A stretch of 64,000 nt of DNA, taken from IMG/VR virus record IMGVR_UViG_3300042319_002138, positions 62,001 to 126,000 of that record; one strand, given 5' to 3'. Made by a program: the position numbers and the translations under genes. The notes below the pieces were generated by a model. The model was not told the DNA's origin. It made no database searches and saw nothing but the letters and a program-made list of their open reading frames with translations. Below, piece after piece: positions 8,439 through 53,696 of the stretch (position 1 is its first letter; each line of letters opens with the position of its first letter).

Positions 8439-9476
8439 TTAAACCCTAGAAATTTTAAACATTTCAGATTCTCGTTCTCTTCTAGTTTTTAAACCTGGAT
8501 ATTCGTCAAACATATTACTTGAGATATTTTTTATCTCTTCTTTAGCTTCTTGGAACTCACTTCGTTTAACGTATTGAATAAATTTGCTTGTCCTTAAATT
8601 ACCCACACCATGATTATAGGTTATAGAAACCATAGCATCATACATACCTTGTGTAATTTCAGGTTCTATACCTTTTTTATTCCACCCATCTAATATATTA
8701 TTAACACCTTCAGAAGCTTTTAACATATCATCTTGTAATAATTGTTCAGCCTGTTCTCTAGTAATTCTTGTAATTTTTTTACCAGGGTTACGTTTATTGT
8801 AAGGTATAATATCTTCATGATTTGGTACAAAACTATAATCACCCCCCGTACTACCTCTTTCGGGGTTAGAAAAGACAGCGTGACCATAACCTGTGGTATA
8901 AGCACCATCACCTAAATTATAGAAATATAAAACAGGTTTACCACCAATACCCTCTTCTTTTTTCAAATGTTTAAATAATCTTTGGCTAGGTTTTCTAATT
9001 TTTTGTGTTTTAACTACAGGTGTTTCTTTTTTAAATGAAGGCATTTCAAATCTAATACCACTCTGATAATCATTGCCTTCAATGGTGTTGGTGATACTAG
9101 TTATTTGGTTTACGGTTAAAATACCTAAAAAAGATGCCAAAACATATTTTATTATTTTTTTCCTAAGTTGGTTGGGTAAAGATTTTATTTTTTTCAATAA
9201 AAGATTTAGATACCCAATAACATCTTCTTTTGTTTTAACCCATTTTTTAGATAAATCTAATTCTTTTTTAGTTTCTTGTGGAAAATCCCACACATACTCT
9301 GGACTAGTTTTGTCATTAGAAATAACGTCCCATTCAAATTCGGGGCTGAGAACATCTTTAACTTCATTTAATAATAAAAGTTTATGTAAAAATTTATCTA
9401 AATATTTATTAGATTCTTCTATTTTATTAGAACTTAGACTTTGGATTTCTTCTCTAATAATTTTTCTGATATTCAT
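8439..9476 (-). CDS. GH24 (T4-type) lysozyme with long N-terminal extension
   Basis: EEG…DGAYTTGYGH, YDAMVSITYNHGVG, RRERESEMF; N-terminal IRKIIREE leader and a hydrophobic stretch. Confidence 0.8.
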   Translation of the reverse strand: MNIRKIIREEIQSLSSNKIEESNKYLDKFLHKLLLLNEVKDVLSPEFEWDVISNDKTSPEYVWDFPQETKKELDLSKKWVKTKEDVIGYLNLLLKKIKSLPNQLRKKIIKYVLASFLGILTVNQITSITNTIEGNDYQSGIRFEMPSFKKETPVVKTQKIRKPSQRLFKHLKKEEGIGGKPVLYFYNLGDGAYTTGYGHAVFSNPERGSTGGDYSFVPNHEDIIPYNKRNPGKKITRITREQAEQLLQDDMLKASEGVNNILDGWNKKGIEPEITQGMYDAMVSITYNHGVGNLRTSKFIQYVKRSEFQEAKEEIKNISSNMFDEYPGLKTRRERESEMFKISRV

Positions 9477-10897
9477 AAAGATTCTGTATCTATTTTAAAT
9501 TTTAATTGTTTAACAAATTCTTCAGAAAATCTCTTTAAAAATGGAACACCGTCTTTACCAAAATACATTAATCCTGATATATTAGTTATACATTTATGGC
9601 CACCAGAATTAGCCTGAACCATATCCCAACCAGTAATTTTTAACATCTTTAAAGCTTTAATTTCTCTATCAGAAAGTGATGTGTAAGGTTTATCCATTAT
9701 TTTTTTAATGGCGTTTTGCCATCTTTCTAATGTATAATCTGGTGAACCACCATTAGGTATTTCATCTAATCCCATAATACCATTCTCAGTATCACCTAAA
9801 ATAGCTACCATATCATTAAAACTAAAACCAACAGATTCTTCCGAAAATTCTTTATTTTTTTCAGCAAAATACTTTACAGTATCAATAGATATAATTTTGT
9901 TTTCTAGTTCAGATTTAAATATACTTAAAACGTCTTGTGCTATTTCACCTAAATTAACACCTTTAAGTTCCCTACCCTTTTTATAAGGATTACAAGAAGC
10001 TTGTAATAAACCTAATGGCCATGTTATAACCAAAAAATTGGCGTTAGGGTATAATTTAAAAGGTACGTATCTATCATAAGAACCTGGTTTAAACATAGAA
10101 CCCCCACCGTATTGTTTTACAATCCCATACTCTTCATCGTATTCTACATTACCACTTTTTGATTGGACCTCAATATAATTGGAAAGGTTAACTTTCATTT
10201 CTTGAGCTGTGGCGTAACCATATTCTTTTGCTAATCTAACTATATTTTGGTAAATGTTTAAAAGTGATGGTGTACATTCCATCACAAGAGTTTCTAAAAA
10301 TTTTGGTTTATTTTTGTAAGCTAATAATAATTTATTAGTTACAAGTGCCATACTAATTTTATTACGTTCTAAATCTTTTCCTTTATCTAGGGTAAAAACA
10401 TAGTTCATAACATCATCTGGTGTAATATCTAATCTAGCATAATCAGCACTATCTACAGTAGATATCATCATAATATCTTTTGATGGGAAAATGTCTGATG
10501 GTGAAAGAACGTTAGAGATAGTCTCAACGTTTGACCTTGAGTGTCTAAAACTTGTTGACGTACTTTTTTCAACACCAACTTGTGAATCGTGGTGGTCAGT
10601 ATGTATAACAAACATTGGTTTACCGTGAGCAAAATCTACCAATACAGGCATTATTTCACCACTAGCGTCAGGTTTTTTAATTGAGAATTCTTTATCACCG
10701 TATTGAATTACTTCAACATCAACAACTTCAATACCGTTGTTTTCTAAATAATTTTTCATGGCAATTGCCGTAGTAACTCCATCTAAATCCTGATGAAAAT
10801 AAATTTTAGCTTTTTGATATCTTTTAGCTAATGTATTTATATTTTGTATACCAGTTTCGACTAACAAAGCCTGTAGTATGTTTTCACTAATAATCAT
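9473..10897 (-). CDS. DHH-family phosphoesterase-like protein
   Basis: HQDLDG, VDFAH, TDHH and C-terminal GGH motifs. Confidence 0.7.
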   Translation of the reverse strand: MIISENILQALLVETGIQNINTLAKRYQKAKIYFHQDLDGVTTAIAMKNYLENNGIEVVDVEVIQYGDKEFSIKKPDASGEIMPVLVDFAHGKPMFVIHTDHHDSQVGVEKSTSTSFRHSRSNVETISNVLSPSDIFPSKDIMMISTVDSADYARLDITPDDVMNYVFTLDKGKDLERNKISMALVTNKLLLAYKNKPKFLETLVMECTPSLLNIYQNIVRLAKEYGYATAQEMKVNLSNYIEVQSKSGNVEYDEEYGIVKQYGGGSMFKPGSYDRYVPFKLYPNANFLVITWPLGLLQASCNPYKKGRELKGVNLGEIAQDVLSIFKSELENKIISIDTVKYFAEKNKEFSEESVGFSFNDMVAILGDTENGIMGLDEIPNGGSPDYTLERWQNAIKKIMDKPYTSLSDREIKALKMLKITGWDMVQANSGGHKCITNISGLMYFGKDGVPFLKRFSEEFVKQLKFKIDTESL

Positions 10898-10922
10898 TAT
10901 ACTTATTGTTTTTCAATAAATA

Positions 10923-11135
10923 TCACGACTTTTGGTTCAGTTCAATTAACTTATTTAGATACTGGAGGCATTTTTCTAAATCTTGTAAACCGTTTTTATG
11001 TCTCCATCTAGTAACATACTTAACAATATTGCCTTCAAAAAAGTCTAATTTTTGTGAGTGTGCGTAATCCCACATCTCAATTCCTTGGTTATAATGTGAG
11101 GGATGTTCTATTTGTTCTTTATTTTTATCTTCCAT
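10923..11135 (-). CDS. DUF3310 / T7 gp1.7-like putative nucleotide kinase domain
   Basis: HPSHY…GNIVKYVTRWRHKNGLQDLEK. Confidence 0.75.
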   Translation of the reverse strand: MEDKNKEQIEHPSHYNQGIEMWDYAHSQKLDFFEGNIVKYVTRWRHKNGLQDLEKCLQYLNKLIELNQKS

Positions 11136-11139
11136 TATT

Positions 11140-11169
11140 TTTGTTTTTAATTAAAAATAGTTATATTTG
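11140..11169 (+). promoter_or_regulatory. Bacteroidota-type housekeeping promoter
   Basis: TTTG at 11140-11143, 18 nt spacer, TATATTTG at 11162-11169, upstream of ATG 11188. Confidence 0.5.
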
Positions 11170-11187
11170 TAAAAATAAAAAAGTTTT

Positions 11188-13595: not shown

Positions 13596-13675
13596 AACTT
13601 ATTAAATATAGAAACAAATAGAAAAAAATAAATGAAATACGATTCTTCTAAATATTTATAAGAAAATATACTTAA

Positions 13676-14191: not shown

Positions 14192-14204
14192 TATAAATAA
14201 AATT

Positions 14205-17239: not shown

Positions 17240-17297
17240 TTCACTTTAAAGATTTTAACAATATATTTTCAAGAAACTTAACCCTTACTAAAATATT

Positions 17298-17456: not shown

Positions 17457-17550
17457 CTACTATTTATTGATAAGTATGACAAAAGTATCTTTTTTGTCAC
17501 ACTCATTTTGTTGTTATAACAACAAAATAAAATTTTTGGTAAAGTCACCA

Positions 17551-17558
17551 ATATTTAT
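17551..17558 (+). promoter_or_regulatory. Putative late promoter motif ATATTTAT (representative copy, upstream of sheath)
   Basis: The same 8-mer lies 12-38 nt upstream of at least 12 gene starts, mostly structural (see findings). Confidence 0.55.
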
Positions 17559-17596
17559 TAATAAAATAACGAAAGAAAAAAAAATAAAATTAAAAA

Positions 17597-20389: not shown

Positions 20390-20400
20390 AAAATAAAAAA

Positions 20401-20432
20401 GAAAAGGCTTTCGGGCCTTTTCTCTTTTTTTT
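20401..20432 (+). terminator. Intrinsic terminator after sheath
   Basis: GAAAAGGCT-TTCG-GGCCTTTTC followed by a T run. Confidence 0.85.
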
Positions 20433-20456
20433 AATATTTATAATAAAAAAGAAACT

Positions 20457-21011
20457 ATGTCAAAAATTATAACAAAAAGACAATTAAATACCTTAATCGA
20501 ATCTACATTAAAAGAGTATGTTCGAGACGAAGACGCTATTTACGCAATGCCAGGTGGTGAGGAATTTATGAACAAAATGGACCAAGAATACAATCCAAAT
20601 TCACCTTCTGAGTATCATAGAGATATTGATAAAAAGAATCAAGAAGCAGAAAAAAACAAGGCTAATACTAATGAAGACTATATGGAAGATAAAACTTGTT
20701 CTGAGTGTGGTGGAGTAATTAAAGAAGGTCTTTGTGAGTCTGGGTGTGGGTCACAAATGGAAGAAGGTAGTTACATGAAAGAAGACGAACTTGAGGAGGG
20801 TAACGCTTTTTCAGGAGCATTAGAAACAGCTAGAAAAGAAGGTAAAACTGAGTTTGAATTTAATGGTAAAACTTATCCTGTTGAGGGTGAGGATAAGGTT
20901 AAAGAATCAGTTAAAGATTTAGCCGAATCAGTTACAAAAACTTTTAACCCTTCATTCTTAACTGAAAATATGGATAACTTTAATAAGTTAATTAATTACA
21001 GAAACAAATAA
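20457..21011 (+). CDS. Acidic hypothetical virion / head protein
   Basis: LIESTLKE leader, CxxC pair, AFSGALETARKEGKTEFEFNGKTY motif; late motif upstream. Confidence 0.6.
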   Translation: MSKIITKRQLNTLIESTLKEYVRDEDAIYAMPGGEEFMNKMDQEYNPNSPSEYHRDIDKKNQEAEKNKANTNEDYMEDKTCSECGGVIKEGLCESGCGSQMEEGSYMKEDELEEGNAFSGALETARKEGKTEFEFNGKTYPVEGEDKVKESVKDLAESVTKTFNPSFLTENMDNFNKLINYRNK

Positions 21012-21022
21012 AAAAAAATAAA

Positions 21023-21622
21023 ATGAGTAAGATTAGATATAAAATCAGAAAAGAACAACTAGAAAGAGTTGTGGAATCTTTTGTAATGGAATCTACAGAA
21101 GGTAAGATGATAGTTAAAGACGCTGCCAAAAAACATAAAATGAATATGGGAGCTGAACAAAATGATGATATGGGTGATGGAATGAAAAAAGCTCCTGTAT
21201 CTAAAAAACACAAAATGAAACAAGCTCCTGAAGTTAAGAAAAACATTCATGGAAAAGTTTCTGAATCTAGAATGGCAGAAATTAAAAACATAATGGAAAC
21301 TTATGGAATTACTGAAGACGAACTAGAAGAAGGTATGATTTTTAAAACACCAGAAGAACTTATGGCTAGAGGACAAAAAATAATTTCTATGGACTCAAAC
21401 GCTGAAAGAATTTACAACACTATTAAAAGAGATGAAAGTAAGTATGGTGAAAACTCAGCTAATAAATATTTAATATTTATTGGAAAAAGTAAGGGTAGAA
21501 TGCTTTACGCTACTTGGGATAAAGGTCTTATGGCTCCAGATAAAACAATGGGTTATTGGATTGAAAGAGGTAAACCTAGAAGTGGTTATGACAAATCTAC
21601 TGGTAGTGGAACCGAACTATAA
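21023..21622 (+). CDS. Hypothetical protein (probable head cargo)
   Basis: 199-aa ORF; KEQLERVVESFVME leader. Confidence 0.6.
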   Translation: MSKIRYKIRKEQLERVVESFVMESTEGKMIVKDAAKKHKMNMGAEQNDDMGDGMKKAPVSKKHKMKQAPEVKKNIHGKVSESRMAEIKNIMETYGITEDELEEGMIFKTPEELMARGQKIISMDSNAERIYNTIKRDESKYGENSANKYLIFIGKSKGRMLYATWDKGLMAPDKTMGYWIERGKPRSGYDKSTGSGTEL

Positions 21623-21626
21623 AATT

Positions 21627-21656
21627 ATAAAAACCCCTTTTAAAGGGGTTTTTTTA
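21627..21656. terminator. Bidirectional intrinsic terminator
   Basis: AAAAACCCCTTT-T-AAAGGGGTTTTT between convergent genes. Confidence 0.8.
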
Positions 21657-21974
21657 TTTATCACCGTTAAGTCCCTCAAAAAATTTATAATGGTCTTCCA
21701 ATGACATGTTATTTACATGTACAATATCTGAGTACAATTGGTACTTGTTATTGAAAAATAAACCTGACAATAAAAAAACAATAAAAAAAGGTAGTGTGAC
21801 GTTCATTGGTGTCATAGTTAACATAGTTAAGGTGACAAAAGACAAACCAAAAGAATGTTTTGTAATTAAACCAAGAATATTTTTTTTACGCAAATTACTT
21901 TCTTTTTGCTTTTTGTACTCAATCTCCTGTTCAGGGGTTAGTCTAAATTGTTCTTTAAAATCTTCTAGTGTCAT
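21654..21974 (-). CDS. Small membrane protein
   Basis: Two adjacent hydrophobic segments; TATATTTG promoter element on the minus strand at 21994-22001. Confidence 0.6.
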   Translation of the reverse strand: MTLEDFKEQFRLTPEQEIEYKKQKESNLRKKNILGLITKHSFGLSFVTLTMLTMTPMNVTLPFFIVFLLSGLFFNNKYQLYSDIVHVNNMSLEDHYKFFEGLNGDK

Positions 21975-22039
21975 AACTTTATCTATTTTTTATCAAATAT
22001 AACAATATTTATCTATATATCATAAATATTTTAAAAAAT

Positions 22040-22900
22040 ATGAAAAAAATTATTTTAACAGAATCACAAAAAATAAAACTACAACAATATCTTAAAGAAG
22101 AAAAAAATATTCGTATGTATGTTTTTGATTGGGATGACAACATTTTAAGGATGCCTACAGAGGTTAAAATGGAGAAGAATGAAAACGGTAAGTGGGTCCC
22201 ATTAAGAGTTTCCACAGAAGATTTTGCTCATTTTAGAACTGACCCTAATTATAGAACAACCCCTGATTCATTTTCCGATTTTACAAATAATGAGGCTTTT
22301 TTAATTGACGCAAAAAAAGCTATTAATAATAAAAGTTTTGCACCAAGTTACAAAAAATTTATTGAATCATTAATATACGCAAACCCATTCGCAATTAATA
22401 CTGCTAGGGGTCATAGTCCAAACACATTAAAAGAGGGGGTAAAACTTTTCATTCAAACGGTATTAAGTGATGATGAAAAAATGATGATGATTAATAATAT
22501 CAAAAAAGAATTACCACAAAGTTTAGTAAAAGGATTAAACAATAAACAATTAATAGATTTATATTTAGATGAGATGGGTGAGTTTTACCCTGTTACTTCT
22601 GAAGAGTTTGGTGATAGGTTTGGCCTTAATGTAAAAGGTGGGGCTTCAAATCCTGAAAATTCTAAAAAAGTGGCTATTGCTCACTTTGTAGAAAAGGTGT
22701 TTAAAAACGTAGAAAAATTAATCCAAAGTGGTGAATATACAAAAGTATCTTTTGGTTTTTCTGATGATGATGTTAGAAATGTTAAAGCTACGGTTGAGTT
22801 ACTGGAAGATGAATTATCTAAAATGTATCCTGAAATACACTTTGTTATATATGATACATCTGACGGTGGGAATAAAAAAATAGTTATTGAGAAAGAATGA
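22040..22900 (+). CDS. HAD-superfamily hydrolase-like protein with N-terminal leader
   Basis: VFDWDDNI (motif I), INTARGH (II), K, FSDDD (IV); MKKIILTESQ…LKEE leader. Confidence 0.65.
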   Translation: MKKIILTESQKIKLQQYLKEEKNIRMYVFDWDDNILRMPTEVKMEKNENGKWVPLRVSTEDFAHFRTDPNYRTTPDSFSDFTNNEAFLIDAKKAINNKSFAPSYKKFIESLIYANPFAINTARGHSPNTLKEGVKLFIQTVLSDDEKMMMINNIKKELPQSLVKGLNNKQLIDLYLDEMGEFYPVTSEEFGDRFGLNVKGGASNPENSKKVAIAHFVEKVFKNVEKLIQSGEYTKVSFGFSDDDVRNVKATVELLEDELSKMYPEIHFVIYDTSDGGNKKIVIEKE

Positions 22901-23016
22901 GGTTAATTTTAATAATATTAGGTGTCACTATTTTATTTTCTTGTAAAAGTACAAGAAATGGTGATTGTGATGCTTACAGTAAAAATGAAGTAAAAAGTGA
23001 AGTTAATCAGATGTAA
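22897..23016 (+). CDS. Small lipoprotein (39 aa)
   Basis: Hand translation MRLILIILGVTILFSCKSTRNGDCDAYSKNEVKSEVNQM; LFSC lipobox; ATGA overlap with the upstream stop. Confidence 0.65.
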   Translation: MRLILIILGVTILFSCKSTRNGDCDAYSKNEVKSEVNQM

Positions 23017-23941
23017 TACTTGTGAAGATGTTGTTAGATTAGTACATACTAAGTGGAAGACTTGTGAATGTGGTAAATCTGGTGGTCAATACAATGACGA
23101 TTTAATTAGTGCTACTATCGGTGGTGACTGTGAAGTTATAGGTTTAAGAAATGATTTTTTTAAAGAACAACCATTTTCTAAAAAAAGAAATGGTAAAGAC
23201 GTAATCATACAAGGTGAATACTTGGGTGATAATCAGATACACAGAATCAAATCAGGAAAAGGACCAAAATTAAAAATGGAAATTAAAGATAATGGTGATG
23301 GAACACATGATATTATCTTTAAAGATAAACGAGATTATACTGTAAATGTAAAAGGTAGTGATAAAAAGCCCAAAGAACTAAAGGGGGTAACATCTAATAC
23401 CGAACCAAGTTTTAAAGATAAAAAGGTTAAAAAAGAATCTTTTATTTCTATTAAAAAAATAATTAAAGAAGAGATGGAAGATTTTGAATGGACAAATCAA
23501 ATAGACCCATTAGAAAACTTTAAGGAATTCTTTTACGGTACTGGTGAATACGAATCTAATAGAAAAAATTCTCCAGGTATTTATATTGCTCGTGATATTA
23601 AATGGTGGTACAATTGGATTCATGAGATTGAAATGTCTCACGCCAGTTTTTTAGAAGATATTGAAGACTTAAATAACATGGTACATGACTTAGTTAATCC
23701 AATAGATGGTTCAGAAAAATATCGAATCTTAGCTATAGACGTATATTCTTACCTTTCACCCACAAGACATTTAGGTGGTAAAAATTATTTACAAGATTCA
23801 GCTAGAACAATAGTTGATGGTTATGAAACATTAGGTCTTTTTGCTAAAAAAAATAATTTAACTCTTTTAGAAACTTTATTTATTTTTGAACAGTTCTTGG
23901 ATAAAATGCGTCATGAAGGTAAACCTTTACACAAAAATTAA
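22997..23941 (+). CDS. Hypothetical protein with N-terminal Zn-ribbon; probable two-part fusion
   Basis: CNTC…CECG; internal IKKIIKEEMEDFEW leader-like segment; GTG start. Confidence 0.55.
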   Translation: MKLIRCNTCEDVVRLVHTKWKTCECGKSGGQYNDDLISATIGGDCEVIGLRNDFFKEQPFSKKRNGKDVIIQGEYLGDNQIHRIKSGKGPKLKMEIKDNGDGTHDIIFKDKRDYTVNVKGSDKKPKELKGVTSNTEPSFKDKKVKKESFISIKKIIKEEMEDFEWTNQIDPLENFKEFFYGTGEYESNRKNSPGIYIARDIKWWYNWIHEIEMSHASFLEDIEDLNNMVHDLVNPIDGSEKYRILAIDVYSYLSPTRHLGGKNYLQDSARTIVDGYETLGLFAKKNNLTLLETLFIFEQFLDKMRHEGKPLHKN

Positions 23942-23948
23942 TAGAATA

Positions 23949-23977
23949 TAAAAAAAGGGTCCGAAGACCCTTTTTTA
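23949..23977. terminator. Bidirectional intrinsic terminator
   Basis: AAAAAAGGGTC-CGAA-GACCCTTTTTT. Confidence 0.85.
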
Positions 23978-24664
23978 TTTTTTCTTGACTTTACCAATTA
24001 CCTCATCAATAATACCATATTCCAAAGCTTCATCAGAGCTTAACCATAAATCACGTTGAGCGTCTTTTTCAACTTGTGAAGGTTTTTTACCACAATACTC
24101 ACCCAAAAGTTCAAACAACAATTTGTTTGTTTTTTCCCATTCAATCATAGTAATACGTGCGTCTTGGATATTACCCCCAGCACCACCACTAGATTGGTGT
24201 AACATTGTTTTTGAAAAACGTAGAGAACTTCTCATACCTTTTGTACCCGCTCCTAAAAGGACTGAACCCATTGAAGCTGCCATACCCGTGTTAATTGTTT
24301 GGATTTTTGTGTCAATATAGTTCATTACGTCAACCATAGAGAGACCTGATTTAACAGAACCACCTGGACTATCAATGTGCATTGTGATTGTTTTCTTTGG
24401 GTCTTGTTGTGACAAGAAAAGAAGTTGTGCCTGTACCGTGATAGCCATTCTATCATCAACAGGACCAGCACACCAAATAATTCTATCCATCATCAATCTA
24501 TCGAATACTGACATTGCTGCAACGTTCATCTGACGTTCTTCAATAATTGTTGGGGTAACTGAACCAATCACGTTTGGTATTGCTGATTGAAAATTTTGGT
24601 AGTCGTGTAGGGTTTGTGAGCCAATACCCATATGCTTTATTGCATATTTATCAAATTCTGTCAT
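23975..24664 (-). CDS. clpP: ATP-dependent Clp protease proteolytic subunit
   Basis: IDSPGGSV, GMAASMGS (Ser), MLHQ (His), RDLWLSSDEALEYGIID. Confidence 0.95.
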   Translation of the reverse strand: MTEFDKYAIKHMGIGSQTLHDYQNFQSAIPNVIGSVTPTIIEERQMNVAAMSVFDRLMMDRIIWCAGPVDDRMAITVQAQLLFLSQQDPKKTITMHIDSPGGSVKSGLSMVDVMNYIDTKIQTINTGMAASMGSVLLGAGTKGMRSSLRFSKTMLHQSSGGAGGNIQDARITMIEWEKTNKLLFELLGEYCGKKPSQVEKDAQRDLWLSSDEALEYGIIDEVIGKVKKK

Positions 24665-24725
24665 ATTTTATCTTTTATTATTTTTTTCTTAAAACAAGAA
24701 TATTTATAATAAAACAATTTGTCAA

Positions 24726-27146
24726 ATGAAAAAACCTAATTACGATAATGCTTTAACTCTTTTGTTTGAAAATAAAGAAAGCAATGAATTAGAATACAAC
24801 ATACTTACCCTTGAGGGTGAAGACTTATATAGAGAACTAGCTTTTATTTTAACAGAACTTTCATTAATTGATAGGAATAGTGGTAAAAAAATTATTTCTG
24901 AAGGTGAAAGAAGATTAATGGAAGAAAGTTTCATGTCTAGTTTAAGAGATTCATGGAAAAATTTATGGGGAACTGCTAATAAACAAGCTCAACAAAATAC
25001 AGGGAAAAATTTAACAGCACAACAACAACAAGCAATACAACAATCTCAAAAAGCTGTAGCTGATGCTACTCAAATATGTATCGAAAGAAAAGAAGCTGAT
25101 TGGGAAGTTTATGGTACCGATAAAACCGACAAGAGTGAGGAAGCTAAAAAGGTTTGGATGCAGAAACAAATTAAATCTTGTGTTGAGGAAGTTCTTAGAG
25201 GTAGTAAAGGACAATCTATTATTGGTAAATTGGGAGATTTTTTACGTGATACTGTAGTTGGTAAAGTTTTAGTTGGTGTTATTGCTATAGGTGCTATGGC
25301 TTATGTAACAGGAGCTATTGGTTCACATACTAAAACTACTACAAAACAAGTTGATGACGGTAATGTAGATGTTTCTGATAGTGTAGTTAAAAACGCTTCT
25401 GATAGTACTTTAGATAATCAAGTACATGTTAAGGTTAATCCTGATGGTGGTATAGTTAAAGTTAAGGTTGGTTCCGATGGTAGTACCGTTGGTGTAATAG
25501 AAAGGGACCACGGAGTTACCGATTTAAAACCTGACCAAGTACAACAAGTTGCTGACAATATTATTAAAACAATAAAAGATGTTAACAAAGACCCAGACTT
25601 AGGTGGGAAACAAGTTAAATCTATCACATTAAAATTCCATTCTGATAAATCTAATACTGATGGTAATGCTGATTCTGACAATGATGGTGTTCCTGACAGT
25701 AATGATTGTAAGGGAGGACCTTGTGCTGAAACACATAATCAGAAAACTATTGACTCTGTTTTGAAATTAGTAAAACAAGGTTTAGAAAAAGATGGTATTA
25801 CAACAAAAGTTAAAGTTAAATCAGAAATTGGTGGTTTAGCTAAAGACCAAGTAAGTAAAAATAGTACTGACGCGAAAGCGGAACAAGGAACTACTGTAAG
25901 TGTCGATGGTATAGATGCCCCTATTAAAACTGTTAAAGATACTAGTTTTCAACAAGGACCTTATGGACCATTAGTGGATAACCCACCAGCACCAGTTCCT
26001 AAAGCTTGTTATTTAGTTTTAAATGGTAAAAAAGTTACTTTAGGTAATGGTGATTACATTTATTTCTACGGTAAGTTAGTAAATAAAAAAATACAAACAA
26101 AAAAAGACGGTCAGACATTTGAAGGTATGATTATTAAAGGTAGTGAAGCTGCTGGAGATACTGATTATGATTTAAAAGTATTGGGTGGATTCACACTTGA
26201 GGAAAATGCTTCTGGAATAAATAAAGGTAGATATCTATCTGTACAAGTTAATAAACCTGAAGGTATTAAAGGTATGTATTTAATTGCATGTGGTACTGAA
26301 GGTGAAGGTGGTCAAGGTGGAGAAGACGTTGGCAGAGGTGAGGACAAACCTATTAAAGGTGGTGATGAACCAATACAAGGTGACGAACCAATTGTAGAAC
26401 CTATGGTACCAACTGATTTCTTACAAGGTAACAGAAATATGCAATTAGCTTATTTGGCTAGTAACTTCTTACCTGAAGGAAAAGATTTTTGGTCAAACAT
26501 GTACATTAAAAAAGGAACAGTAATCCCTAGTGGGTTTTTAGATGCCGCTCTAAACCAAGGTAAATATGACCCTGAAAAATATTTAACAGCTTTTTATAAT
26601 AAACTTAAAAAAGATAATTCACTTACTAGAGATATTAATCTTGGTGCGTGGTTAGCTAAAGTACGTAGTACAGAAAATTTAGGTTTAATAAAATGGGTTA
26701 GGAATACAAGAAAAGGTATTGGTAGTTTTATTAAAAATTTACAAAAATCATTCCCTGAGTTTGGTATTGGTAAAAGACAAAAAGCTAAATCTGTTAGACC
26801 AGGTGCTGAAGGACAAGCTATGGGATTGGCAGGTGAATCTTTAAATGGTAGAGTTGATTTAATTAATGAATTAAGTGGTTCCGCTGAACAAGCTGGTTTT
26901 GACCAAAATCAGTTTATGAAAAATTTACCACAATTTATGGCTATGTTAAGTGCAATGTATTACAGCGTTGGGGGTACTAAATTACCGTACGACAAGGAAG
27001 CTGTATTACAAAAATGTAAAAAATATGGATGTAAAACAGGTGGTGGTACCAAATATAAGAAAACAAAGTCAGATGACTATAAATTTTTAGAATCTAATTC
27101 ACCTTTAAAAGAAGAATTAAATAGAATAAAAAAGTTGATGAAATAA
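24726..27146 (+). CDS. Large hypothetical virion protein with one predicted TM segment
   Basis: VLVGVIAIGAMAYVTGAIG hydrophobic stretch, DSDNDGVPD Ca-binding-like motif, C-terminal LKEELNRIKKLM; late motif upstream. Confidence 0.55.
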   Translation: MKKPNYDNALTLLFENKESNELEYNILTLEGEDLYRELAFILTELSLIDRNSGKKIISEGERRLMEESFMSSLRDSWKNLWGTANKQAQQNTGKNLTAQQQQAIQQSQKAVADATQICIERKEADWEVYGTDKTDKSEEAKKVWMQKQIKSCVEEVLRGSKGQSIIGKLGDFLRDTVVGKVLVGVIAIGAMAYVTGAIGSHTKTTTKQVDDGNVDVSDSVVKNASDSTLDNQVHVKVNPDGGIVKVKVGSDGSTVGVIERDHGVTDLKPDQVQQVADNIIKTIKDVNKDPDLGGKQVKSITLKFHSDKSNTDGNADSDNDGVPDSNDCKGGPCAETHNQKTIDSVLKLVKQGLEKDGITTKVKVKSEIGGLAKDQVSKNSTDAKAEQGTTVSVDGIDAPIKTVKDTSFQQGPYGPLVDNPPAPVPKACYLVLNGKKVTLGNGDYIYFYGKLVNKKIQTKKDGQTFEGMIIKGSEAAGDTDYDLKVLGGFTLEENASGINKGRYLSVQVNKPEGIKGMYLIACGTEGEGGQGGEDVGRGEDKPIKGGDEPIQGDEPIVEPMVPTDFLQGNRNMQLAYLASNFLPEGKDFWSNMYIKKGTVIPSGFLDAALNQGKYDPEKYLTAFYNKLKKDNSLTRDINLGAWLAKVRSTENLGLIKWVRNTRKGIGSFIKNLQKSFPEFGIGKRQKAKSVRPGAEGQAMGLAGESLNGRVDLINELSGSAEQAGFDQNQFMKNLPQFMAMLSAMYYSVGGTKLPYDKEAVLQKCKKYGCKTGGGTKYKKTKSDDYKFLESNSPLKEELNRIKKLMK

Positions 27147-27211
27147 AAATAAAATATTTTATCAGCATATTTATAATTAAACATAACAAAAAATTAAAAA
27201 AAAATTAAACT

Positions 27212-27700: not shown

Positions 27701-27723
27701 TATTTCTTTATTGAACATAAATT

Positions 27724-28211: not shown

Positions 28212-28231
28212 ATTTATAAATATTTAATGAT

Positions 28232-30428: not shown

Positions 30429-32201
30429 ATGCCTAGAAGTATAAAAGAAATACTTGAAGATTATAAACAAGAGGTAAATTCAGGCTCAAAAGGCCTGAAT
30501 TTTAGTGCATATAAAAATGAAATGATTACCGAAAAAAGAGTAAAGGTACCTGGTATTGAAAAAAACGTTGCTACAAGTGCTGGTGAAGGGTACTCAAACA
30601 TGGATGTTGTTAAACAAAATCTAAGGTCTTTAGGTTTTGACGTTGATGATTTGGGTAAACAAAAAACTGTTGCTCAATTAATGGCAGCACCTTTTGGTTT
30701 TAAATTTTCACTTCTTTGGCCTAAAGAAAATAAATGGGGTGAAAAAAGTTATGTTACTCTATCAATAAATGATAAAGCAGTAGAAGCCGATAGAATTGAT
30801 ACTAGAGCAAAAGTTTCTAACCCAAATAGTAATGGTAAATTAATATTAGAAACAAAATTAGGTCCGGCAATTATTTTTATAGACCCTAAAGAAATAGAAA
30901 GAACTTTAGGTGGTGATGCCGGTAAGTTACCACCAGGTAAAAAAGGTGAAAACTATAAAAGAATGTTAGAAGAAGGTGTTACTTATAAAGTACAAGTAGA
31001 TTCAGACGTTATTTTATCAGGAGAAGGTAATGAAGAAACAGAGGGGGAGGAAACAGAAAAAGAAATTCCAATTCCAGAAGAAATCGCTTCAGGTAAAAAT
31101 AGAAATGAAATTTTTAGATTATTACTAAAAGGTTTTGGTAAATACGATGGAGCTGTTGTTTATGGTGATGGTTTTAAAGACCCTGAAATGGCTAAAGAAT
31201 ATTCTAAACTACAAAGAGAAGTACAAAAGGGTAATGCTAGTAAAGAAGATTTAAAAGAGTTTAGGGAAAAGTCTGGTAGGGATTCTTACAGTATGATGGT
31301 TTCTAATTTAAGAAAGTCATTTCCAAATAACTTTTTAAAAAACTTATCAAAAGTTTTCCCTGAATTTAATATTCAATTTACAAAACAAAATGTCGAAGAA
31401 AATTATACTTTATCTGAAGATGAAAAAAACAAAGACAAATATAAAAGATGGAATTTAGTTTTTCCTGGTAAAGTTGTGGGGGGTCAGACCTTAGACAATT
31501 TAGATAAGAACGTTAGAGAATTTATGGTGGCAGTTAAAAAATGGTTTGCTGTACCTGTAAAGGGGCCTGATGGTAAAAAACGTTCTTATAGTATTTCTTA
31601 TGATGAAGACAAGGTAAATCAGTACTGGAATAATTTTTACGGTACTAAAACTGAATCTAAGTTAACACTTTCAAATATTTTAATGGAAATGTTAAAAGAA
31701 GAAGATGATACAAATGGTGGTAAAACAGTTAAACCCGATTATCTTTTATTAAAAATATTACCTGGTGGATTACAAACTATTGATGAAGGTCAAGAAGACG
31801 TTGAATCTCGTGAGGTGGGGGGTTCAAAAGGTTCTAAAAAACAACTTATTGATGCTGTTTTAGTTGAAGCGTCAGCTTTCTTTAAAGAAGGGGAGGACGG
31901 TAAAATAAATCAAAATGATTTAAATGTATTACCTGGTTATTCTAACGATAAAACTTATAGTGATAAAAAAGGTAAGTCCAATTTAAACATCGAATACACT
32001 AAGGACGGTAAAGTAACTAAAGGTGTTATAACCATTAAAAATAATACTAAATTAACTAATTTATTAACAGAAGTTATTAGGGGTGGTGATATGAAAATCA
32101 AAAAATCTAAAACAGATAGTAAATTTATTATCTTATATTATCCTTCACAAACAGAAGTTTCAAATAAAATTAATAACACTTGGAGTGAAATTTTAAAATA
32201 A
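30429..32201 (+). CDS. Hypothetical virion protein (probable head cargo)
   Basis: 590 aa; late motif upstream; shares NRN… and FPEF segments with 24726-27146. Confidence 0.55.
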   Translation: MPRSIKEILEDYKQEVNSGSKGLNFSAYKNEMITEKRVKVPGIEKNVATSAGEGYSNMDVVKQNLRSLGFDVDDLGKQKTVAQLMAAPFGFKFSLLWPKENKWGEKSYVTLSINDKAVEADRIDTRAKVSNPNSNGKLILETKLGPAIIFIDPKEIERTLGGDAGKLPPGKKGENYKRMLEEGVTYKVQVDSDVILSGEGNEETEGEETEKEIPIPEEIASGKNRNEIFRLLLKGFGKYDGAVVYGDGFKDPEMAKEYSKLQREVQKGNASKEDLKEFREKSGRDSYSMMVSNLRKSFPNNFLKNLSKVFPEFNIQFTKQNVEENYTLSEDEKNKDKYKRWNLVFPGKVVGGQTLDNLDKNVREFMVAVKKWFAVPVKGPDGKKRSYSISYDEDKVNQYWNNFYGTKTESKLTLSNILMEMLKEEDDTNGGKTVKPDYLLLKILPGGLQTIDEGQEDVESREVGGSKGSKKQLIDAVLVEASAFFKEGEDGKINQNDLNVLPGYSNDKTYSDKKGKSNLNIEYTKDGKVTKGVITIKNNTKLTNLLTEVIRGGDMKIKKSKTDSKFIILYYPSQTEVSNKINNTWSEILK

Positions 32202-39496: not shown

Positions 39497-39507
39497 AATT
39501 TTAAAAT

Positions 39508-39822: not shown

Positions 39823-39836
39823 ATAATAAGTTTTTT

Positions 39837-46942: not shown

Positions 46943-46996
46943 AATATTATGGGTGATAAAAAAAATTAATAGGATTAAAAAAATAAGATAAAAATA

Positions 46997-48982: not shown

Positions 48983-49021
48983 TTATACTATCTGTTTTAG
49001 TTAAAAAAATAATAAAGTAAT

Positions 49022-51559: not shown

Positions 51560-51599
51560 AATAGTTTATTCTTAGTTATTTTTTTGGTATAATTGTTTT

Positions 51600-52166: not shown

Positions 52167-52533
52167 TTCGTCATCTCTAGATAAATTCCTATATAAAATA
52201 TACAAATCCTTTGGTGTTAAAAAAAATTCAGTTTTTGTTTTTGAAACAGACACAGAAGATTTATTATTAACTTATAAAATATTTTTAGAATTCGACCAAA
52301 AAATAGACATTAGAAAAGAATTACCTAAGACAATACAAATACATAAAAAAGGTACAACATTTTTTACCATAAATGCTCTAAATAAATTAATCGAAAAAGA
52401 ATTCAACCTAAATTCCGGCAATGTAAACTATTCTGAATATAATTTAGAATGGTCAAAATACGAAAACTCTATTATTTTAATTAAAAATAATGAATTAGAT
52501 ATTTTACAACTAAAGAAGAAGATTACTGAATAA
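52129..52533 (+). CDS. Hypothetical phage protein
   Basis: 134-aa ORF; IHKKGTTFFTINALNKLIE segment. Confidence 0.6.
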   Translation: MQKKILLVATFINSSSLDKFLYKIYKSFGVKKNSVFVFETDTEDLLLTYKIFLEFDQKIDIRKELPKTIQIHKKGTTFFTINALNKLIEKEFNLNSGNVNYSEYNLEWSKYENSIILIKNNELDILQLKKKITE

Positions 52534-52559
52534 GAGCATATTTATAAGAAAAAAGGGTT

Positions 52560-52748
52560 ATGGAAGATAATAGAAAAAAAGAAAAACAACTTCAGGATAA
52601 ACTGAATAACTTCCTAAAGAATAATGATAATGATTGTGACGGTGAGGAATGTTTAATTAAAGACCCACAAGAAATAGTTCAAAGAGAACAGAAAAAAATT
52701 ATCACTAATGATGGAAGACAATTACTTAGTGAATATACAAGATATTAA
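52560..52748 (+). CDS. Small hypothetical protein
   Basis: 62 aa, late motif at 52538; CDGEEC and DGRQLLSE segments. Confidence 0.55.
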   Translation: MEDNRKKEKQLQDKLNNFLKNNDNDCDGEECLIKDPQEIVQREQKKIITNDGRQLLSEYTRY

Positions 52749-52751
52749 GAA

Positions 52752-53696
52752 ATGGCAAAAACTAAAATCAACGAAGACTTAGAAAGGTTTAAAAAACTTT
52801 TTGGTTACAACCCGTCTAAGGGTAACGAATTAAATGAAGTTAGAAGACACACATATTCTATAAATGAATATGGTGATTATGCTGATGACGATGAAGAAGG
52901 TACTGATACTGAAGAAGATGCTGGTACTGAAGAAGAAAACACTGATTTTGATTTTGGTGATGAAGGCAATCCTGAAGATACCGAAGGGACTGATGATTTT
53001 GGTACGGAAGAACCAACTGAAGAACCTGAAGAAGAAACTGATGAGTTTGGTACCGCAGATGAATTTAGTGCTGTTGATGAATTAGAAGATGAAGATTCTG
53101 ATGTTGAAGAAGTAGATGTTACAGACATCATCAAAAAATCTGACGAAGCAACAGAATTTGCTAGACAAGCTTTAACTGTTGGACAAGAGAATGGTCAGTT
53201 CTTACAATCTTTAACTGATAAACTATCTAATCTTGAGTCACAAATAATGAAGATGGACACAATAGCTTCTAAAATTTCTAAATTGGAACAAGATATTAAA
53301 ACTCCTGAAGAAAAGTTAGAACTTCGTTCATTAGATAGTTATCCATTTAATTTGAAACTTACTGACTATTGGTCAGAAAAGGCGGCACAAAATAAACATT
53401 ATGATATTTCTGGTGGTGAATCAAATGTTAATGGTAAAGAAGTTGAATATAAATTAACACCAGAAGATATTGACGATTTTGATGATGTGAATGTTAAAAA
53501 TTCTTTTGTACCTGAATCTTACAATCGAAAAAAAAGAGTTTTAAAAGAAGGTGAAGAAGAACAAAATATTGCTAAAAGTAAAATTGAATCAATTTTCAGG
53601 AATTTATCAAAAGAAGATAAAGAAGAAGTTATAAAATCACTGTCTCGTAAAGAAATTACTAGAGATGAGGTTTTGAAAAATTTTAAAAAAAAGTAA
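52752..53696 (+). CDS. Highly acidic coiled-coil protein (possible head / scaffold component)
   Basis: INEDLERFKKL leader, Asp/Glu-rich tract, heptad region, SLDSYPFN motif. Confidence 0.55.
   Translation: MAKTKINEDLERFKKLFGYNPSKGNELNEVRRHTYSINEYGDYADDDEEGTDTEEDAGTEEENTDFDFGDEGNPEDTEGTDDFGTEEPTEEPEEETDEFGTADEFSAVDELEDEDSDVEEVDVTDIIKKSDEATEFARQALTVGQENGQFLQSLTDKLSNLESQIMKMDTIASKISKLEQDIKTPEEKLELRSLDSYPFNLKLTDYWSEKAAQNKHYDISGGESNVNGKEVEYKLTPEDIDDFDDVNVKNSFVPESYNRKKRVLKEGEEEQNIAKSKIESIFRNLSKEDKEEVIKSLSRKEITRDEVLKNFKKK

What the first reader, a model, noticed from the sequence alone, without database searches (positions are those of the whole stretch)
8439..53696. Shared I/L-x-E leader on unrelated proteins: probable capsid-targeting and protease-cleavage signal
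Seen: short basic-then-acidic helical segments recur in otherwise unrelated proteins: MNIRKIIREE (lysozyme), MIISENILQALLVE (DHH), MSKIITKRQLNTLIESTLKE (20457), KEQLERVVESFVME (21023), MKKIILTESQ…LKEE (HAD), internal IKKIIKEE (22997), LKEELNRIKKLM (C-terminus of 24726), LSNILMEMLKEE (30429), INEDLERFKKL (52752). Most lie in units preceded by ATATTTAT. Established: T4 gp21 cleaves after I/L-x-E, and T4 internal proteins use a short capsid-targeting leader. Inference: a portable tag that loads enzymes (lysozyme, DHH and HAD phosphoesterases) into the head for injection, possibly as anti-defence nucleotide hydrolases.
Basis: partly seen in the sequence, partly recalled or inferred. Interest (0 to 1): 0.65.

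Follow-up and report, generated by a model that had tools for sequence, protein, structure and literature searches.

The report
Shared N-terminal tag on phage proteins
A freshwater jumbo T4-like phage puts the same short N-terminal helix, ending in the cut site of its T4-type head protease, on about twenty otherwise unrelated late proteins; this probably loads them into the head, but packaging and cleavage have not been shown.

Summary
Only 2-3 of the nine cited peptides are true members: the lysozyme N-terminus, the internal copy in the w22997 gene, and half of the w22040 N-terminus.

The true motif is x-I-[KR]-K-I-[IL]-[KR]-E-E, within 17 residues of Met1. It sits on 18 proteins of this 226-kb genome, mostly outside the window. 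A complete 380-kb relative has 33 hits, about 28 of them N-terminal, and other IMG/VR contigs of the clade have 100. It is almost absent from 596 Gb of bacterial genomes.

Selection acts on the peptide: codon usage in the leader equals the genome's. Leader genes share the ATATTTAT promoter-like box with virion genes.

The phage has a T4-type head module with a Peptidase_S77 (gp21-like) protease. The major capsid protein (MCP) carries I-N-E where T4 gp23 is cut.

Best reading, about 0.45: a T4-CTS-like (capsid targeting sequence) propeptide. Packaging and cleavage are untested. The DHH and HAD calls and the anti-defence idea are unsupported.

New here: an 'E-S-x-DFDW' junction repeats every ~110-130 aa in large ORFs of a relative, which may be polyproteins.

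The parts
9447..9476 (-). Type-A leader (MNIRKIIREE), first 10 codons of the lysozyme-domain gene
   Evidence: PSSM 25.6, second best in the genome. The orthologue in the 380-kb relative keeps a leader (MEIRKIIREELNDFDW) at 42% overall identity.
8439..9476 (-). 345-aa protein: leader, ~175-aa unknown N-terminal part, then a C-terminal Phage_lysozyme domain. It is the only leader-bearing protein in the window with a recognised enzyme domain.
   Evidence: PF00959, 65.7 bits, residues 185-336; phrog_7 endolysin. It has no promoter box of its own and lies downstream of w9473-10897 in the same minus-strand unit.
23447..23491 (+). Intact internal copy of leader plus junction (SIKKIIKEEMEDFEW) at residues 151-165 of the w22997-23941 gene, after a Cys-rich, Lys-rich N-terminal part
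   Evidence: PSSM 24.2. No ATG and no ATATTTAT just upstream. Similar intact internal copies occur in the 380-kb relative.
22040..22069 (+).
   Evidence: HMM 3.2 bits, profile positions 1-11 only. No Pfam, PHROG or PDB match for the protein.
20457..20516 (+). N-terminus MSKIITKRQLNTLIESTLKE: leader-like to the eye, not statistically supported
   Evidence: Absent from the PSSM and HMM hit lists.
21050..21091 (+). KEQLERVVESFVME in the w21023 gene: not statistically supported
   Evidence: Absent from the PSSM and HMM hit lists.
10856..10897 (-). MIISENILQALLVE, N-terminus of the weak 'DHH' protein: not supported as a leader
   Evidence: No PSSM or HMM hit. DHH domain 18.9 bits against a cut-off of 28.1.
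27105..27140 (+). C-terminal LKEELNRIKKLM of the 806-aa protein: a different motif, shared only with w52767-52799
   Evidence: Regex scan finds this motif only in these two proteins.
52767..52799 (+). INEDLERFKKL near the N-terminus of the acidic 314-aa protein: partner of the motif above, not the leader
31668..31703 (+). LSNILMEMLKEE, internal (about residue 414 of 590): a chance resemblance
   Evidence: Position; below the PSSM threshold.
10916..10923 (-). ATATTTAT box 18 nt upstream of the w9473-10897 / lysozyme unit
17551..17558 (+). ATATTTAT box upstream of the tail sheath gene. Further copies lie at 20434, 22005, 24700, 27167 (tube), 30403, 35097, 52538, 60898 and 60926.
   Evidence: 54 genes genome-wide carry the box within 60 nt upstream on the same strand, including virion genes. 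In the 380-kb relative it precedes TerL, portal, S77 protease, sheath and tube, but not the DNA polymerase-like, helicase or Clp genes.
23975..24664 (-). ClpP protease. It is not the prohead protease, although PHROG labels it 'head maturation protease'.
   Evidence: PF00574, 195 bits; phrog_94.

Best explanation
The window belongs to a freshwater jumbo myophage. The record is 226 kb and about 70% complete; complete relatives are 363-380 kb. Its head module is T4-like. About twenty late-class proteins begin with a 9-12-residue amphipathic helix, M-x(1-3)-[IL]-[KR]-K-I-[IL]-[KR]-E-[ES], or with a 23-residue extended form.

I propose that this helix works like the T4 capsid targeting sequence (CTS). 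It would dock the protein onto the assembling prohead core. Two conserved core-position proteins next to the protease gene carry the archetypal leaders. After shell completion, the gp21-type Peptidase_S77 protease would cut after the invariant Glu of [IL]-[KR]-E. That would release the mature protein inside the head, to leave with the DNA at infection.

Shown here: the motif, its positional specificity, peptide-level selection, portability, clade restriction, the shared promoter class, the presence of the S77 protease, and a conserved MCP cut site.

Inferred: binding to the core, cleavage, presence in virions, and ejection.
For: 1. Motif statistics. There are 24 PSSM hits against about 2.3 in shuffles, and 19 of 24 are N-terminal. 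The regex gives 18 N-terminal hits against 3.4 expected.
2. Independent replication. The 380-kb relative G008 has 33 hits, and other IMG/VR contigs of the clade have 100 leader ORFs.
3. Portability. Bodies behind the leader are unrelated by BLASTP, apart from one pair.
4. Peptide-level selection. Codon usage in the leader equals the genome's.
5. Constraint on the leader. In the protein next to the protease, 17 of the first 19 residues are invariant while the rest falls to 34% identity. AF2 shows the leader as a separate low-confidence helix (3-14) before a confident four-helix bundle.
6. Head module. It holds TerL, a gp20 portal, Peptidase_S77 (95.6 bits; 33% identical to T4 gp21), an acidic scaffold-like protein and a Gp23 MCP of 237 bits.
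7. MCP cut site. The MCP has L-I-N-E|T aligned with T4 gp23 L-T-E65|A.
8. Leader logo. Glu is 41/41, P3 is I or L in 41/41, and P2 is K or R in 39/41. This fits L/I-X-E, the gp21 specificity (PMC9026906).
9. T4 control. T4 substrates read from NC_000866 have the same layout: IPII/IPIII MKTYQEFIAE, Alt MELITELFDE, gp24 MAKINELLRE, gp22 MLKEQLIAE, gp21 MNEPQLLIE. A regex for that layout picks 11 of 96 T4 ORFs, and 7 of those are known core or gp21-substrate proteins.
10. Promoter class. Leader genes are enriched for the ATATTTAT box that also precedes the virion genes: G000 10/18, OR 6.0, p=5e-4; G008 13/21, OR 8.2, p=8e-6.
11. Clade restriction. The exact coding pattern occurs in 41 IMG/VR stretches but only 4 times in 596 Gb of bacterial genomes, and one of those four is a mis-binned phage. 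Contigs that can be assessed carry Gp23 or S77.
12. Variant in a distant relative. G009 has the variant I-I-N-E-E. Only the hydrophobic-hydrophobic-x-E-E core is kept, which is what a protease site would require.
Against: - There is no proteomic or biochemical evidence. No cultured relative with a virion proteome was found.
- There is no sequence homology to the T4 CTS, only the same architecture.
- In many copies strong conservation continues past the putative cut site (D-F-D-W-[VI]-[KR]-D-[VI]-x-P). A discarded propeptide does not explain that.
- Intact internal copies exist, so a free N-terminus is not required.
- Some DFDW proteins lack the helix.
- About 20-30 cargo species, up to 1577 aa, is far beyond T4's handful.
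- That ATATTTAT is a late promoter is inferred only from which genes it precedes.
- The complex prediction of leader against the scaffold-like protein gave no verdict.
Confidence: 0.45

Rival explanations
1. Module cap or linker of a clade-specific modular protein superfamily. The helix and the following E-[ES]-x-DFDW-[VI]-[KR]-D-[VI]-x-P would be the N-terminal boundary element of fast-evolving ~110-130-aa modules. These modules are duplicated, fused and swapped as cassettes (promoter box plus 5' coding end). Conservation would then reflect shared descent, recombination and a structural role at module boundaries, not capsid targeting.
For: - 38 internal junctions with the same consensus recur every ~110-130 aa in ORFs of 300-1577 aa.
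- g034 has a second internal 'EDDFEW' at residue ~104. The same second module exists as a stand-alone gene with an N-terminal helix leader.
- Tandem arrays of leader genes occur, for example six in a row in L020.
- The promoter box abuts the ATG (3-8 nt) in leader genes, so box plus leader forms one compact unit.
- A domain HMM reaches some single-module proteins and the N-terminal part of the lysozyme orthologue.
Against: - Many robust leaders have no DFDW at all: the conserved protein next to the protease, the G000 lysozyme, and all type-B proteins.
- Codon usage shows no extra nucleotide conservation, which recombination-driven homogenisation would produce.
- Bodies are not detectably homologous. 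The HMM's full-length matches are largely to its own training set.
- This reading does not exclude the first: the junctions themselves carry L/I-x-E.
Confidence: 0.25
2. Docking tag for another machine. The helix would be recognised by something other than the prohead core. Candidates are a degron or adaptor signal for the phage's own ClpP and Clp-ATPase, a chaperone handle (the phage appears to carry J-domain and FKBP genes), or a tail, baseplate or membrane targeting signal.
For: - The phage encodes a bona fide ClpP (195 bits) and a Clp_N-type ATPase-like ORF (read from sequence). Both are conserved in the 380-kb relative.
- The leader is an exposed, separate N-terminal helix.
- From memory, not tested here: short N-terminal motifs of the type Met-basic-hydrophobic are known ClpX signals.
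Against: - The Clp genes lack the ATATTTAT box that leader genes share with virion genes.
- The strongest leaders sit on conserved genes inside the head module, directly after the S77 protease.
- The invariant Glu with I/L at P3 has no known role in Clp recognition.
- Intact internal copies argue against a strict N-degron.
Confidence: 0.12
3. A constraint at mRNA or translation level. Leader genes are transcribed from a box only 3-8 nt before the ATG, so their mRNAs are nearly leaderless. The A/T-rich first codons (K, I, N, E) would then be selected for initiation in a host without Shine-Dalgarno use.
For: - No SD-like k-mer is enriched upstream of genes; the enriched k-mers are A-rich.
- Box-to-ATG spacing is bimodal, and leader genes fall in the short class: G000 9/10, G008 10/13, p=4e-5 and 5e-4.
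Against: - Leader genes without a box of their own, inside operons, keep the leader. Examples are the lysozyme, g027, g034, g206, g207 and g270.
- Synonymous codons vary exactly as in the rest of the genome.
- A fixed residue order, and 17 invariant residues among the first 19 across 34%-identical orthologues, is a peptide-level signature.
- Short-spaced genes without the leader exist.
- Abundant virion genes begin MA/MS/MG instead.
Confidence: 0.06
4. Compositional chance. In a 30% GC proteome rich in K, I, L, N and E, K/I/E-rich helices recur by chance.
For: This holds for the generic I/L-x-E rule (992 hits).
Against: The core motif is about 10-fold above shuffled proteomes, positionally restricted, replicated in independent genomes, and invariant among diverged orthologues.
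Confidence: 0.02

Closest known systems
T4 capsid targeting sequence (CTS) of internal proteins IPI/IPII/IPIII, and the short gp21-cleaved N-terminal propeptides of Alt and gp24
   Same: - A short N-terminal segment of about 10 residues on otherwise unrelated proteins, with two hydrophobic residues, any residue, then Glu at positions 6-11.
- A phage with a gp21-type Peptidase_S77 protease, gp20 portal, gp23 MCP and an acidic core.
- L/I-X-E specificity, with the MCP site conserved in position.
   Different: - No sequence similarity to MKTYQEFIAE.
- The leader is basic and Ile-rich.
- It sits on about 20-30 proteins per genome instead of about 5, including proteins up to 1577 aa in a relative.
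- It is also carried by the conserved core-position proteins themselves, whereas the T4 CTS is said not to be conserved in other core proteins (PMC9958956).
- It is often followed by a second conserved block (DFDW) that would stay on the mature protein.
- A longer 23-residue form exists.
- Function is untested.
Propeptides of ejection or inner-body proteins of phiKZ-like giant phages (phiKZ, 201phi2-1, SPN3US)
   Same: - Jumbo phage with many head-internal proteins processed after Glu by a diverged gp21 homologue.
- N-termini conserved between diverged paralogues, for example SPN3US gp53 and gp54 with 15 identical residues.
- Redundant cut sites (PMC5694885; PMC9026906).
   Different: - Those propeptides are mostly over 100 residues and the motif is S/A-X-E. 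Here the tag is 9-23 residues with I/L at P3, as in T4.
- This phage's MCP and protease hit the T4-type Pfam families directly.
Viral polyproteins with conserved protease junctions (general principle)
   Same: A repeated, conserved junction ([LIV]-x-E-S-x-DFDW) lies between variable modules. Its P3-P1 matches the specificity expected of the phage's own protease.
   Different: No phage prohead protease is known to me to process a multi-module cargo polyprotein into equal-sized units. No cleavage has been shown here.
Mobile promoter cassettes (PeSL) of T4-type phages.
   Same: A conserved promoter-proximal sequence flanks small variable ORFs in plastic genome regions. Here the ATATTTAT box abuts the ATG of leader genes.
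   Different: PeSLs are early promoters with stem-loops and act at DNA level. Here conservation is at peptide level.

Membership tests
T4-type CTS / gp21-cleaved N-terminal propeptide system | The phage encodes a gp21-type prohead core protease (Peptidase_S77) | tested here: met
   PF03420, 95.6 bits, at genome 23887-24654, outside the window. 33% identity to T4 gp21, E=5e-26. Catalytic residues were not checked individually.
T4-type CTS / gp21-cleaved N-terminal propeptide system | T4-type head module: gp20 portal, core/scaffold, gp23 MCP | tested here: met
   Gp23 PF07068, 236.7 bits. TerL phrog_2. Portal 26.5% identical to T4 gp20, E=9e-26. An acidic 425-aa scaffold-like protein sits before the MCP.
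T4-type CTS / gp21-cleaved N-terminal propeptide system | Short N-terminal segment ending in L/I-X-E | tested here: met
   Logo of 41 leaders: [IL] 41/41, [KR] 39/41, E 41/41. The Met lies 1-6 residues (type A) or 13-16 residues (type B) before the core.
T4-type CTS / gp21-cleaved N-terminal propeptide system | The tag is shared by otherwise unrelated proteins (portable) | tested here: met
   BLASTP of the bodies finds one related pair only. The same leader sits on different bodies in relatives. Caveat: a subset shares a possible DFDW module.
T4-type CTS / gp21-cleaved N-terminal propeptide system | Sequence similarity to the T4 CTS (MKTYQEFIAE) | tested here: not met
   T4 N-termini were read from NC_000866. 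Only the layout of hydrophobic pair, any residue, Glu is shared.
T4-type CTS / gp21-cleaved N-terminal propeptide system | Co-expression with head genes (late) | tested here: inconclusive
   The promoter-like box ATATTTAT is shared with virion genes and absent before replication-type and Clp genes. There are no transcript data; the one RNA library holds only short contigs.
T4-type CTS / gp21-cleaved N-terminal propeptide system | Tagged proteins are incorporated into proheads or virions | not testable with these tools
   No cultured relative and no proteome. The complex prediction gave no verdict.
T4-type CTS / gp21-cleaved N-terminal propeptide system | The tag is removed by the prohead protease after Glu | not testable with these tools
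   Indirect only: the MCP has I-N-E at the aligned gp23 maturation site.
Phage_lysozyme (PF00959), for w8439-9476 | Domain match above the curated cut-off | tested here: met
   65.7 bits against 22.3. The orthologue in G008 scores 73 bits.
DHH phosphoesterase (PF01368), for w9473-10897 | Domain match above the curated cut-off | tested here: not met
   18.9 bits against 28.1, N-terminal part only. No PHROG match. No PDB relative.
HAD phosphatase, for w22040-22900 | Any family match | tested here: not met
   No Pfam hit, only a 16-residue PHROG fragment, and no PDB relative. The fold was not predicted.
Prohead protease, for w23975-24664 (PHROG label 'head maturation protease') | Belongs to a prohead protease family rather than to cellular ClpP | tested here: not met
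   CLP_protease PF00574, 195 bits, full length. The S77 protease elsewhere in the genome fills the prohead role.

The most novel reading that the evidence does not exclude
The clade may run a polyprotein cargo system. Large late ORFs (300-1577 aa) are built of variable ~110-130-aa modules separated by the junction [LIV]-x-E|S-x-DFDW-[VI]-[KR]-D-[VI]-x-P. The T4-type prohead protease would cut them inside the head into dozens of small proteins. Each would bear the same mature N-terminus as the single-module proteins have once their helix leader is removed. The phage would thus inject a large, fast-evolving, combinatorial library of small effectors, loaded by one portable tag.
Probability: 0.2. 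Interest if true: 0.8.

Novelty: new variant of a known kind. Interest (0 to 1): 0.6.

Why it matters
The T4 CTS is the classic example of a portable capsid-loading tag, and it is used to engineer protein delivery by phage. It is known from a handful of proteins in the T-even phages.

If this reading is right, an uncultured clade of freshwater jumbo phages has scaled the principle up to 20-30 tagged proteins per genome, possibly with polyprotein precursors. Three things would follow:

- A simple sequence rule would identify injected proteins, which are candidate host-takeover and anti-defence factors, directly from metagenomes.
- There would be a second, very different tag for packaging foreign proteins.
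- There would be a test case for how tag, core and protease co-evolve, since a distant relative uses I-I-N-E-E.

The prediction can be tested directly with recombinant protease and leader-reporter fusions, without cultivating the phage.

Tried and rejected
- Megablast of 12 kb of the window, and tblastn of two leader proteins, against 50,697 phage records found no close or cultured relative carrying the leader. The nearest cultured MCPs are 42-44% identical (Microcystis phage Mel-JY01, Flavobacterium phage immuto). The immuto head module lacks the leader; it has only a loosely similar 73-aa protein.
- Full-text search for the peptide strings found nothing relevant, and nothing was found on such a motif in Bacteroidota jumbo phages.
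- Pfam scans of 20 leader- or DFDW-bearing proteins gave no family above cut-off except the lysozyme. PDB sequence search of the 'HAD' and 'DHH' proteins gave nothing. The ESM Atlas look-up of a single-module protein gave only an unnamed viral cluster at 0.76.
- AF2 of the two-module protein g034 with 17 homologues gave pLDDT 41 and is unusable.
- Foldseek of the g027 model against BFVD gave only generic helical bundles, with no E<=0.001.
- Complex prediction of the scaffold-like protein with g034 residues 1-40 returned 'no answer'. It is not evidence either way.
- Laying a freshwater metatranscriptome and a lake metagenome on w20300-26200 gave only short contigs. They cannot show starts, strand or level.
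- I did not run the 1.84-billion-protein profile search. A profile of ~25 informative columns cannot reach significance there, and the operators asked for restraint.
- Rejected: that the window's PHROG 'head maturation protease' is the relevant enzyme, since it is a ClpP. Also rejected: that g008's leader-like N-terminus is a member, since it looks like the start of a Clp_N domain.
It was redone from stored loci.

Full report
**What the window is**

The window is bases 62,001-126,000 of a single 226,303-bp IMG/VR virus record, estimated about 70% complete. GC is about 30%. No Shine-Dalgarno-like word is enriched upstream of genes; the enriched words are A-rich. This and the Flavobacteria-style signal peptides suggest a Bacteroidota host, which is an inference. 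The DNA occurs in many lake-water metagenomes.

The window holds a tail sheath (PF04984/PF17482), a tail tube, a baseplate hub-like gene, a ClpP, an endonuclease V-like gene, a helicase and a lysozyme-domain protein.

The head module lies outside the window. It comprises:
- TerL;
- a portal, 26.5% identical to T4 gp20;
- a Peptidase_S77 protease, 95.6 bits and 33% identical to T4 gp21;
- two small proteins;
- an acidic 425-aa scaffold-like protein;
- a Gp23-family MCP of 237 bits.

All gene calls are from my own crude longest-ORF caller. N-termini therefore carry some uncertainty. In two cases the leader itself indicates a later Met as the true start.

**Checking the observation**

All nine strings exist, but three are internal or C-terminal. 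The proposed common denominator, I/L-x-E, occurs 992 times in 71,525 residues, so it cannot define anything.

- Type A: M-N-[IL]-[RK]-K-I-I-K-E-E or M-[KR]-N-[LI]-I-K-K-I-L-K-E-S.
- Type B: a 23-25-residue form, M-K-K-[VI]-I-K-L-[NT]-E-x-D-L-x-x-L-V-x-K-[IV]-I-x-E-E, whose end is the type-A core.

The statistics are as follows:
- A simple regex for the core hits 18 times in the first 30 residues against 3.4 expected.
- A PSSM gives 24 hits against 0-6 (mean 2.3) in shuffled proteomes, 19 of them within 17 residues of Met1.
- A strict type-B HMM built from relatives' sequences finds three clear members, plus marginal or half matches.

- The lysozyme N-terminus (w9447-9476) and the internal copy in the w22997 gene (w23447-23491) are robust.
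- The w22040 N-terminus matches half of type B.
- The w9473, w20457, w21023 and w30429 peptides do not score.
- The w24726 C-terminus and the w52752 N-terminus share a different, two-member motif.

Most true copies lie outside the window, among small ORFs of unknown function.

**Is it more than shared ancestry or DNA repetition?**

- Behind the leader the proteins are unrelated by BLASTP, apart from one pair.
- Codon usage for K, I, E, R and L inside the leader equals genome-wide usage. There is no extra nucleotide conservation, so selection acts on the peptide.
- Orthologues of one tagged protein keep M1 N2 L3 I6 I7 K8 E9 F14 W16 invariant down to 39% identity. The same leader sits on other bodies in metagenomes.
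- In the conserved 174-aa protein that follows the protease gene, 17 of the first 19 residues are invariant across nine orthologues whose remainder falls to 34% identity.
- AF2 models that protein as a confident four-helix bundle (residues 21-160, pLDDT 80-92). It is preceded by a separate, lower-confidence leader helix (3-14) and a GGYDD linker.

**Distribution**

- The exact degenerate coding pattern of type A occurs in 41 stretches of about 30 IMG/VR contigs, all with 24-34% GC. The PSSM finds 100 leader ORFs there, including tandem arrays.
- These contigs are fragments of ~320-380-kb genomes. Gp23 or S77 is present wherever enough sequence is held.
- A complete 380,343-bp relative (G008) has 33 PSSM hits, about 28 of them N-terminal.
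- In 596 Gb of bacterial and archaeal genomes the pattern occurs four times. One of these is a 362,763-bp contig labelled a Paceibacterota MAG; its length equals that of an IMG/VR phage record.
- A more distant complete relative (G009, MCP 54% identical) carries a variant, M-N-x-x-L-L-x-I-I-N-E-E. Only hydrophobic-hydrophobic-x-E-E is constant.
- The nearest cultured phages (MCP 42-44% identical) show no such leader in the head module examined.

**Promoter class**

ATATTTAT is no more frequent than composition predicts (99 against 93 copies). However, 54 genes carry it within 60 nt upstream on the coding strand. These include the sheath, tube, portal, S77 protease and several large tail or baseplate-region genes.

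In G008 the box precedes TerL, portal, S77 protease, sheath and tube. It does not precede the DNA polymerase-like, helicase, RNR-like or Clp genes.

Leader genes are enriched for a box of their own: G000 10/18, OR 6.0, p=5e-4; G008 13/21, OR 8.2, p=8e-6. The rest sit downstream in such units.

That this is a late promoter is an inference from gene content. The spacing to the ATG is bimodal (3-8 nt and 12-18 nt), and leader genes fall in the short class.

**Comparison with T4**

Reviews state the following (PMC9026906; PMC5694885; PMC9958956):
- gp21 cuts after L/I-X-E.
- The first 10 residues of IPIII suffice for head incorporation.
- Residues 4 and 7 target, and residues 8 and 10 direct processing.
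- 10-20-residue propeptides are removed from the IPs, Alt and gp24.

I read these N-termini from NC_000866: IPII/IPIII MKTYQEFIAE, IPI MKTFKEFTST, Alt MELITELFDE, gp24 MAKINELLRE, gp22 MLKEQLIAE, gp21 MNEPQLLIE. All share M-x(4-6)-hydrophobic-hydrophobic-x-E.

A regex for that layout picks 11 of 96 T4 ORFs in the two regions I held. Seven of the 11 are known core proteins or gp21 substrates. Those regions were chosen because they contain head genes, so this is a biased sample.

The present leader has the same layout, with Glu 41/41 and I/L at P3 41/41. The MCP of this phage has L-I-N-E|T where T4 gp23 has L-T-E65|A. This suggests that the specificity is conserved.

The two small proteins directly after the protease gene, in the place of the T4 core proteins, carry the archetypal type-B and type-A leaders. 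This synteny is kept in relatives.

**Interpretation**

The best-supported explanation is a CTS-like propeptide. The helix would take late accessory proteins into the prohead core, and the S77 protease would cut after [IL]-[KR]-E. I give this about 0.45, because nothing shows packaging or cleavage and several facts do not fit simply:
- In about half of the copies conservation continues beyond the putative cut site, as E-[ES]-x-D-F-D-W-[VI]-[KR]-D-[VI]-x-P.
- Intact internal copies exist.
- Some DFDW proteins lack the helix.

**An unexpected extension**

Following the DFDW block led to 38 internal junctions in G000 and G008. Their consensus is [LIV]-[NK]-E-S-x-D-F-D-W-[VIA]-[KR]-D-[VI]-x-P, and they recur every ~110-130 aa inside ORFs of 300-1577 aa. 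One has nine, another seven. P3 is hydrophobic in 28/38 against about 24% background, P1 is Glu, and P1' is Ser in 21/38. Each module is therefore preceded by a gp21-type site.

The second module of g034 also exists in metagenomes as a stand-alone gene with the N-terminal helix leader. N-terminal leader and internal junction are thus interchangeable contexts for the same module. This fits a polyprotein reading, in which all products end up with the same mature N-terminus. It fits equally a purely structural linker or cap reading, which is my main rival explanation (0.25).

**Other rivals**

- A tag for the phage's own ClpP and Clp-ATPase, or for another machine (0.12). The Clp genes are real and conserved, but they are in a different promoter class, and the strongest leaders sit in the head module.
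- A translation constraint on nearly leaderless mRNAs (0.06). The short spacing is real, but operon-internal genes keep the leader and the synonymous sites are free.

Only the lysozyme is both a robust leader-bearer and a recognisable enzyme. Its G008 orthologue keeps the leader. A separate small T4-lysozyme-like ORF elsewhere looks like the ordinary endolysin, though I read that from sequence only. If so, a virion-associated role for the tagged lysozyme is plausible.

The 'DHH' call is sub-threshold and the 'HAD' call has no support. Neither N-terminus scores as a leader. 'Anti-defence nucleotide hydrolases' is therefore unsupported. Leader-bearing proteins are somewhat more diverged between G000 and G008 than other proteins (median 41% against 56% identity). 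They are not significantly less often shared.

**Verdict**

This is a real, clade-wide, portable, peptide-level N-terminal tag in a T4-type jumbo phage. It is a new variant of a known kind (CTS-like), with an unexplained DFDW junction system attached. Function remains inferred, and simple recombinant tests would decide it.

Noticed in passing
G008 loci L063:9811-13575, L063:16643-19348, L076:10915-13500 and others; in G000, genome 30691-31335 (g034) and 186485-187855 (g206): Large ORFs are built of ~110-130-aa variable modules separated by the conserved junction [LIV]-x-E-S-x-DFDW-[VI]-[KR]-D-[VI]-x-P. There are 38 internal copies in two genomes and no Pfam match. They may be polyproteins or a new repeat-module family.
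   Followed up: partly
genome-wide; in the window e.g. 10916-10923(-), 17551-17558, 20434-20441, 24700-24707, 27167-27174: The ATATTTAT box is positioned in two spacing classes before the ATG (3-8 nt and 12-18 nt). Leader genes use the short class, which implies nearly leaderless mRNAs or a compact promoter-plus-leader cassette.
   Followed up: partly
window 27105-27140 and 52767-52799: A second short motif, [LI]-x-E-[ED]-L-x-R-[IF]-K-K-L, lies at the C-terminus of the 806-aa protein and the N-terminus of the acidic 314-aa protein. It could be a matched pair of interaction helices, or chance.
   Followed up: partly
window 52752-53696 and genome 11958-14234 (g015): Two proteins have long acidic stretches with repeated 'FDFG(D/G)' units. 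g015 also carries a weak leader core (NIKPVIKEEK) at residues 14-23.
   Followed up: no
window 45014-51559: Three tandem paralogues (642, 661 and 845 aa) are 67-73% identical over the first ~435 residues and diverge after that. They look like alternative fibre or receptor-binding proteins.
   Followed up: no
window 23975-24664(-); genome 6316-8799(-), 177652-178584, 179858-180271: The phage carries a full ClpP (195 bits) and a Clp_N-type ATPase-like ORF of 827 aa. It also has J-domain-like and FKBP-like ORFs, which I read from sequence only. ClpP and the ATPase are conserved in the 380-kb relative.
   Followed up: partly
genome 152635-153036, 153329-153658, 154781-155095, 185533-186154 (outside the window): Five small ORFs resemble separate pieces of the major capsid protein, with up to 59% identity over 61 aa. 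Their origin is unexplained.
   Followed up: no
L080 (JBAZIW010000001.1) and G009 (IMGVR_UViG_3300029288_000055): A GTDB contig labelled 'Candidatus Paceibacterota MAG' has exactly the length (362,763 bp) of an IMG/VR jumbo-phage record that has gp23, gp20 and S77 genes. It is probably a phage genome binned as a CPR bacterium.
   Followed up: partly
window 22997-23941: The gene starts with GTG in the longest frame. It combines a Cys-rich N-terminal part (CxxC...CxC), a Lys-rich linker and then the leader-plus-DFEW module, so it appears to be a gene fusion.
   Followed up: partly
window 20300-26200: A freshwater metatranscriptome library holds short contigs, 90-99% alike, over parts of this stretch, including w23496-23638. 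This is presence only; it shows no starts or strand.
   Followed up: yes
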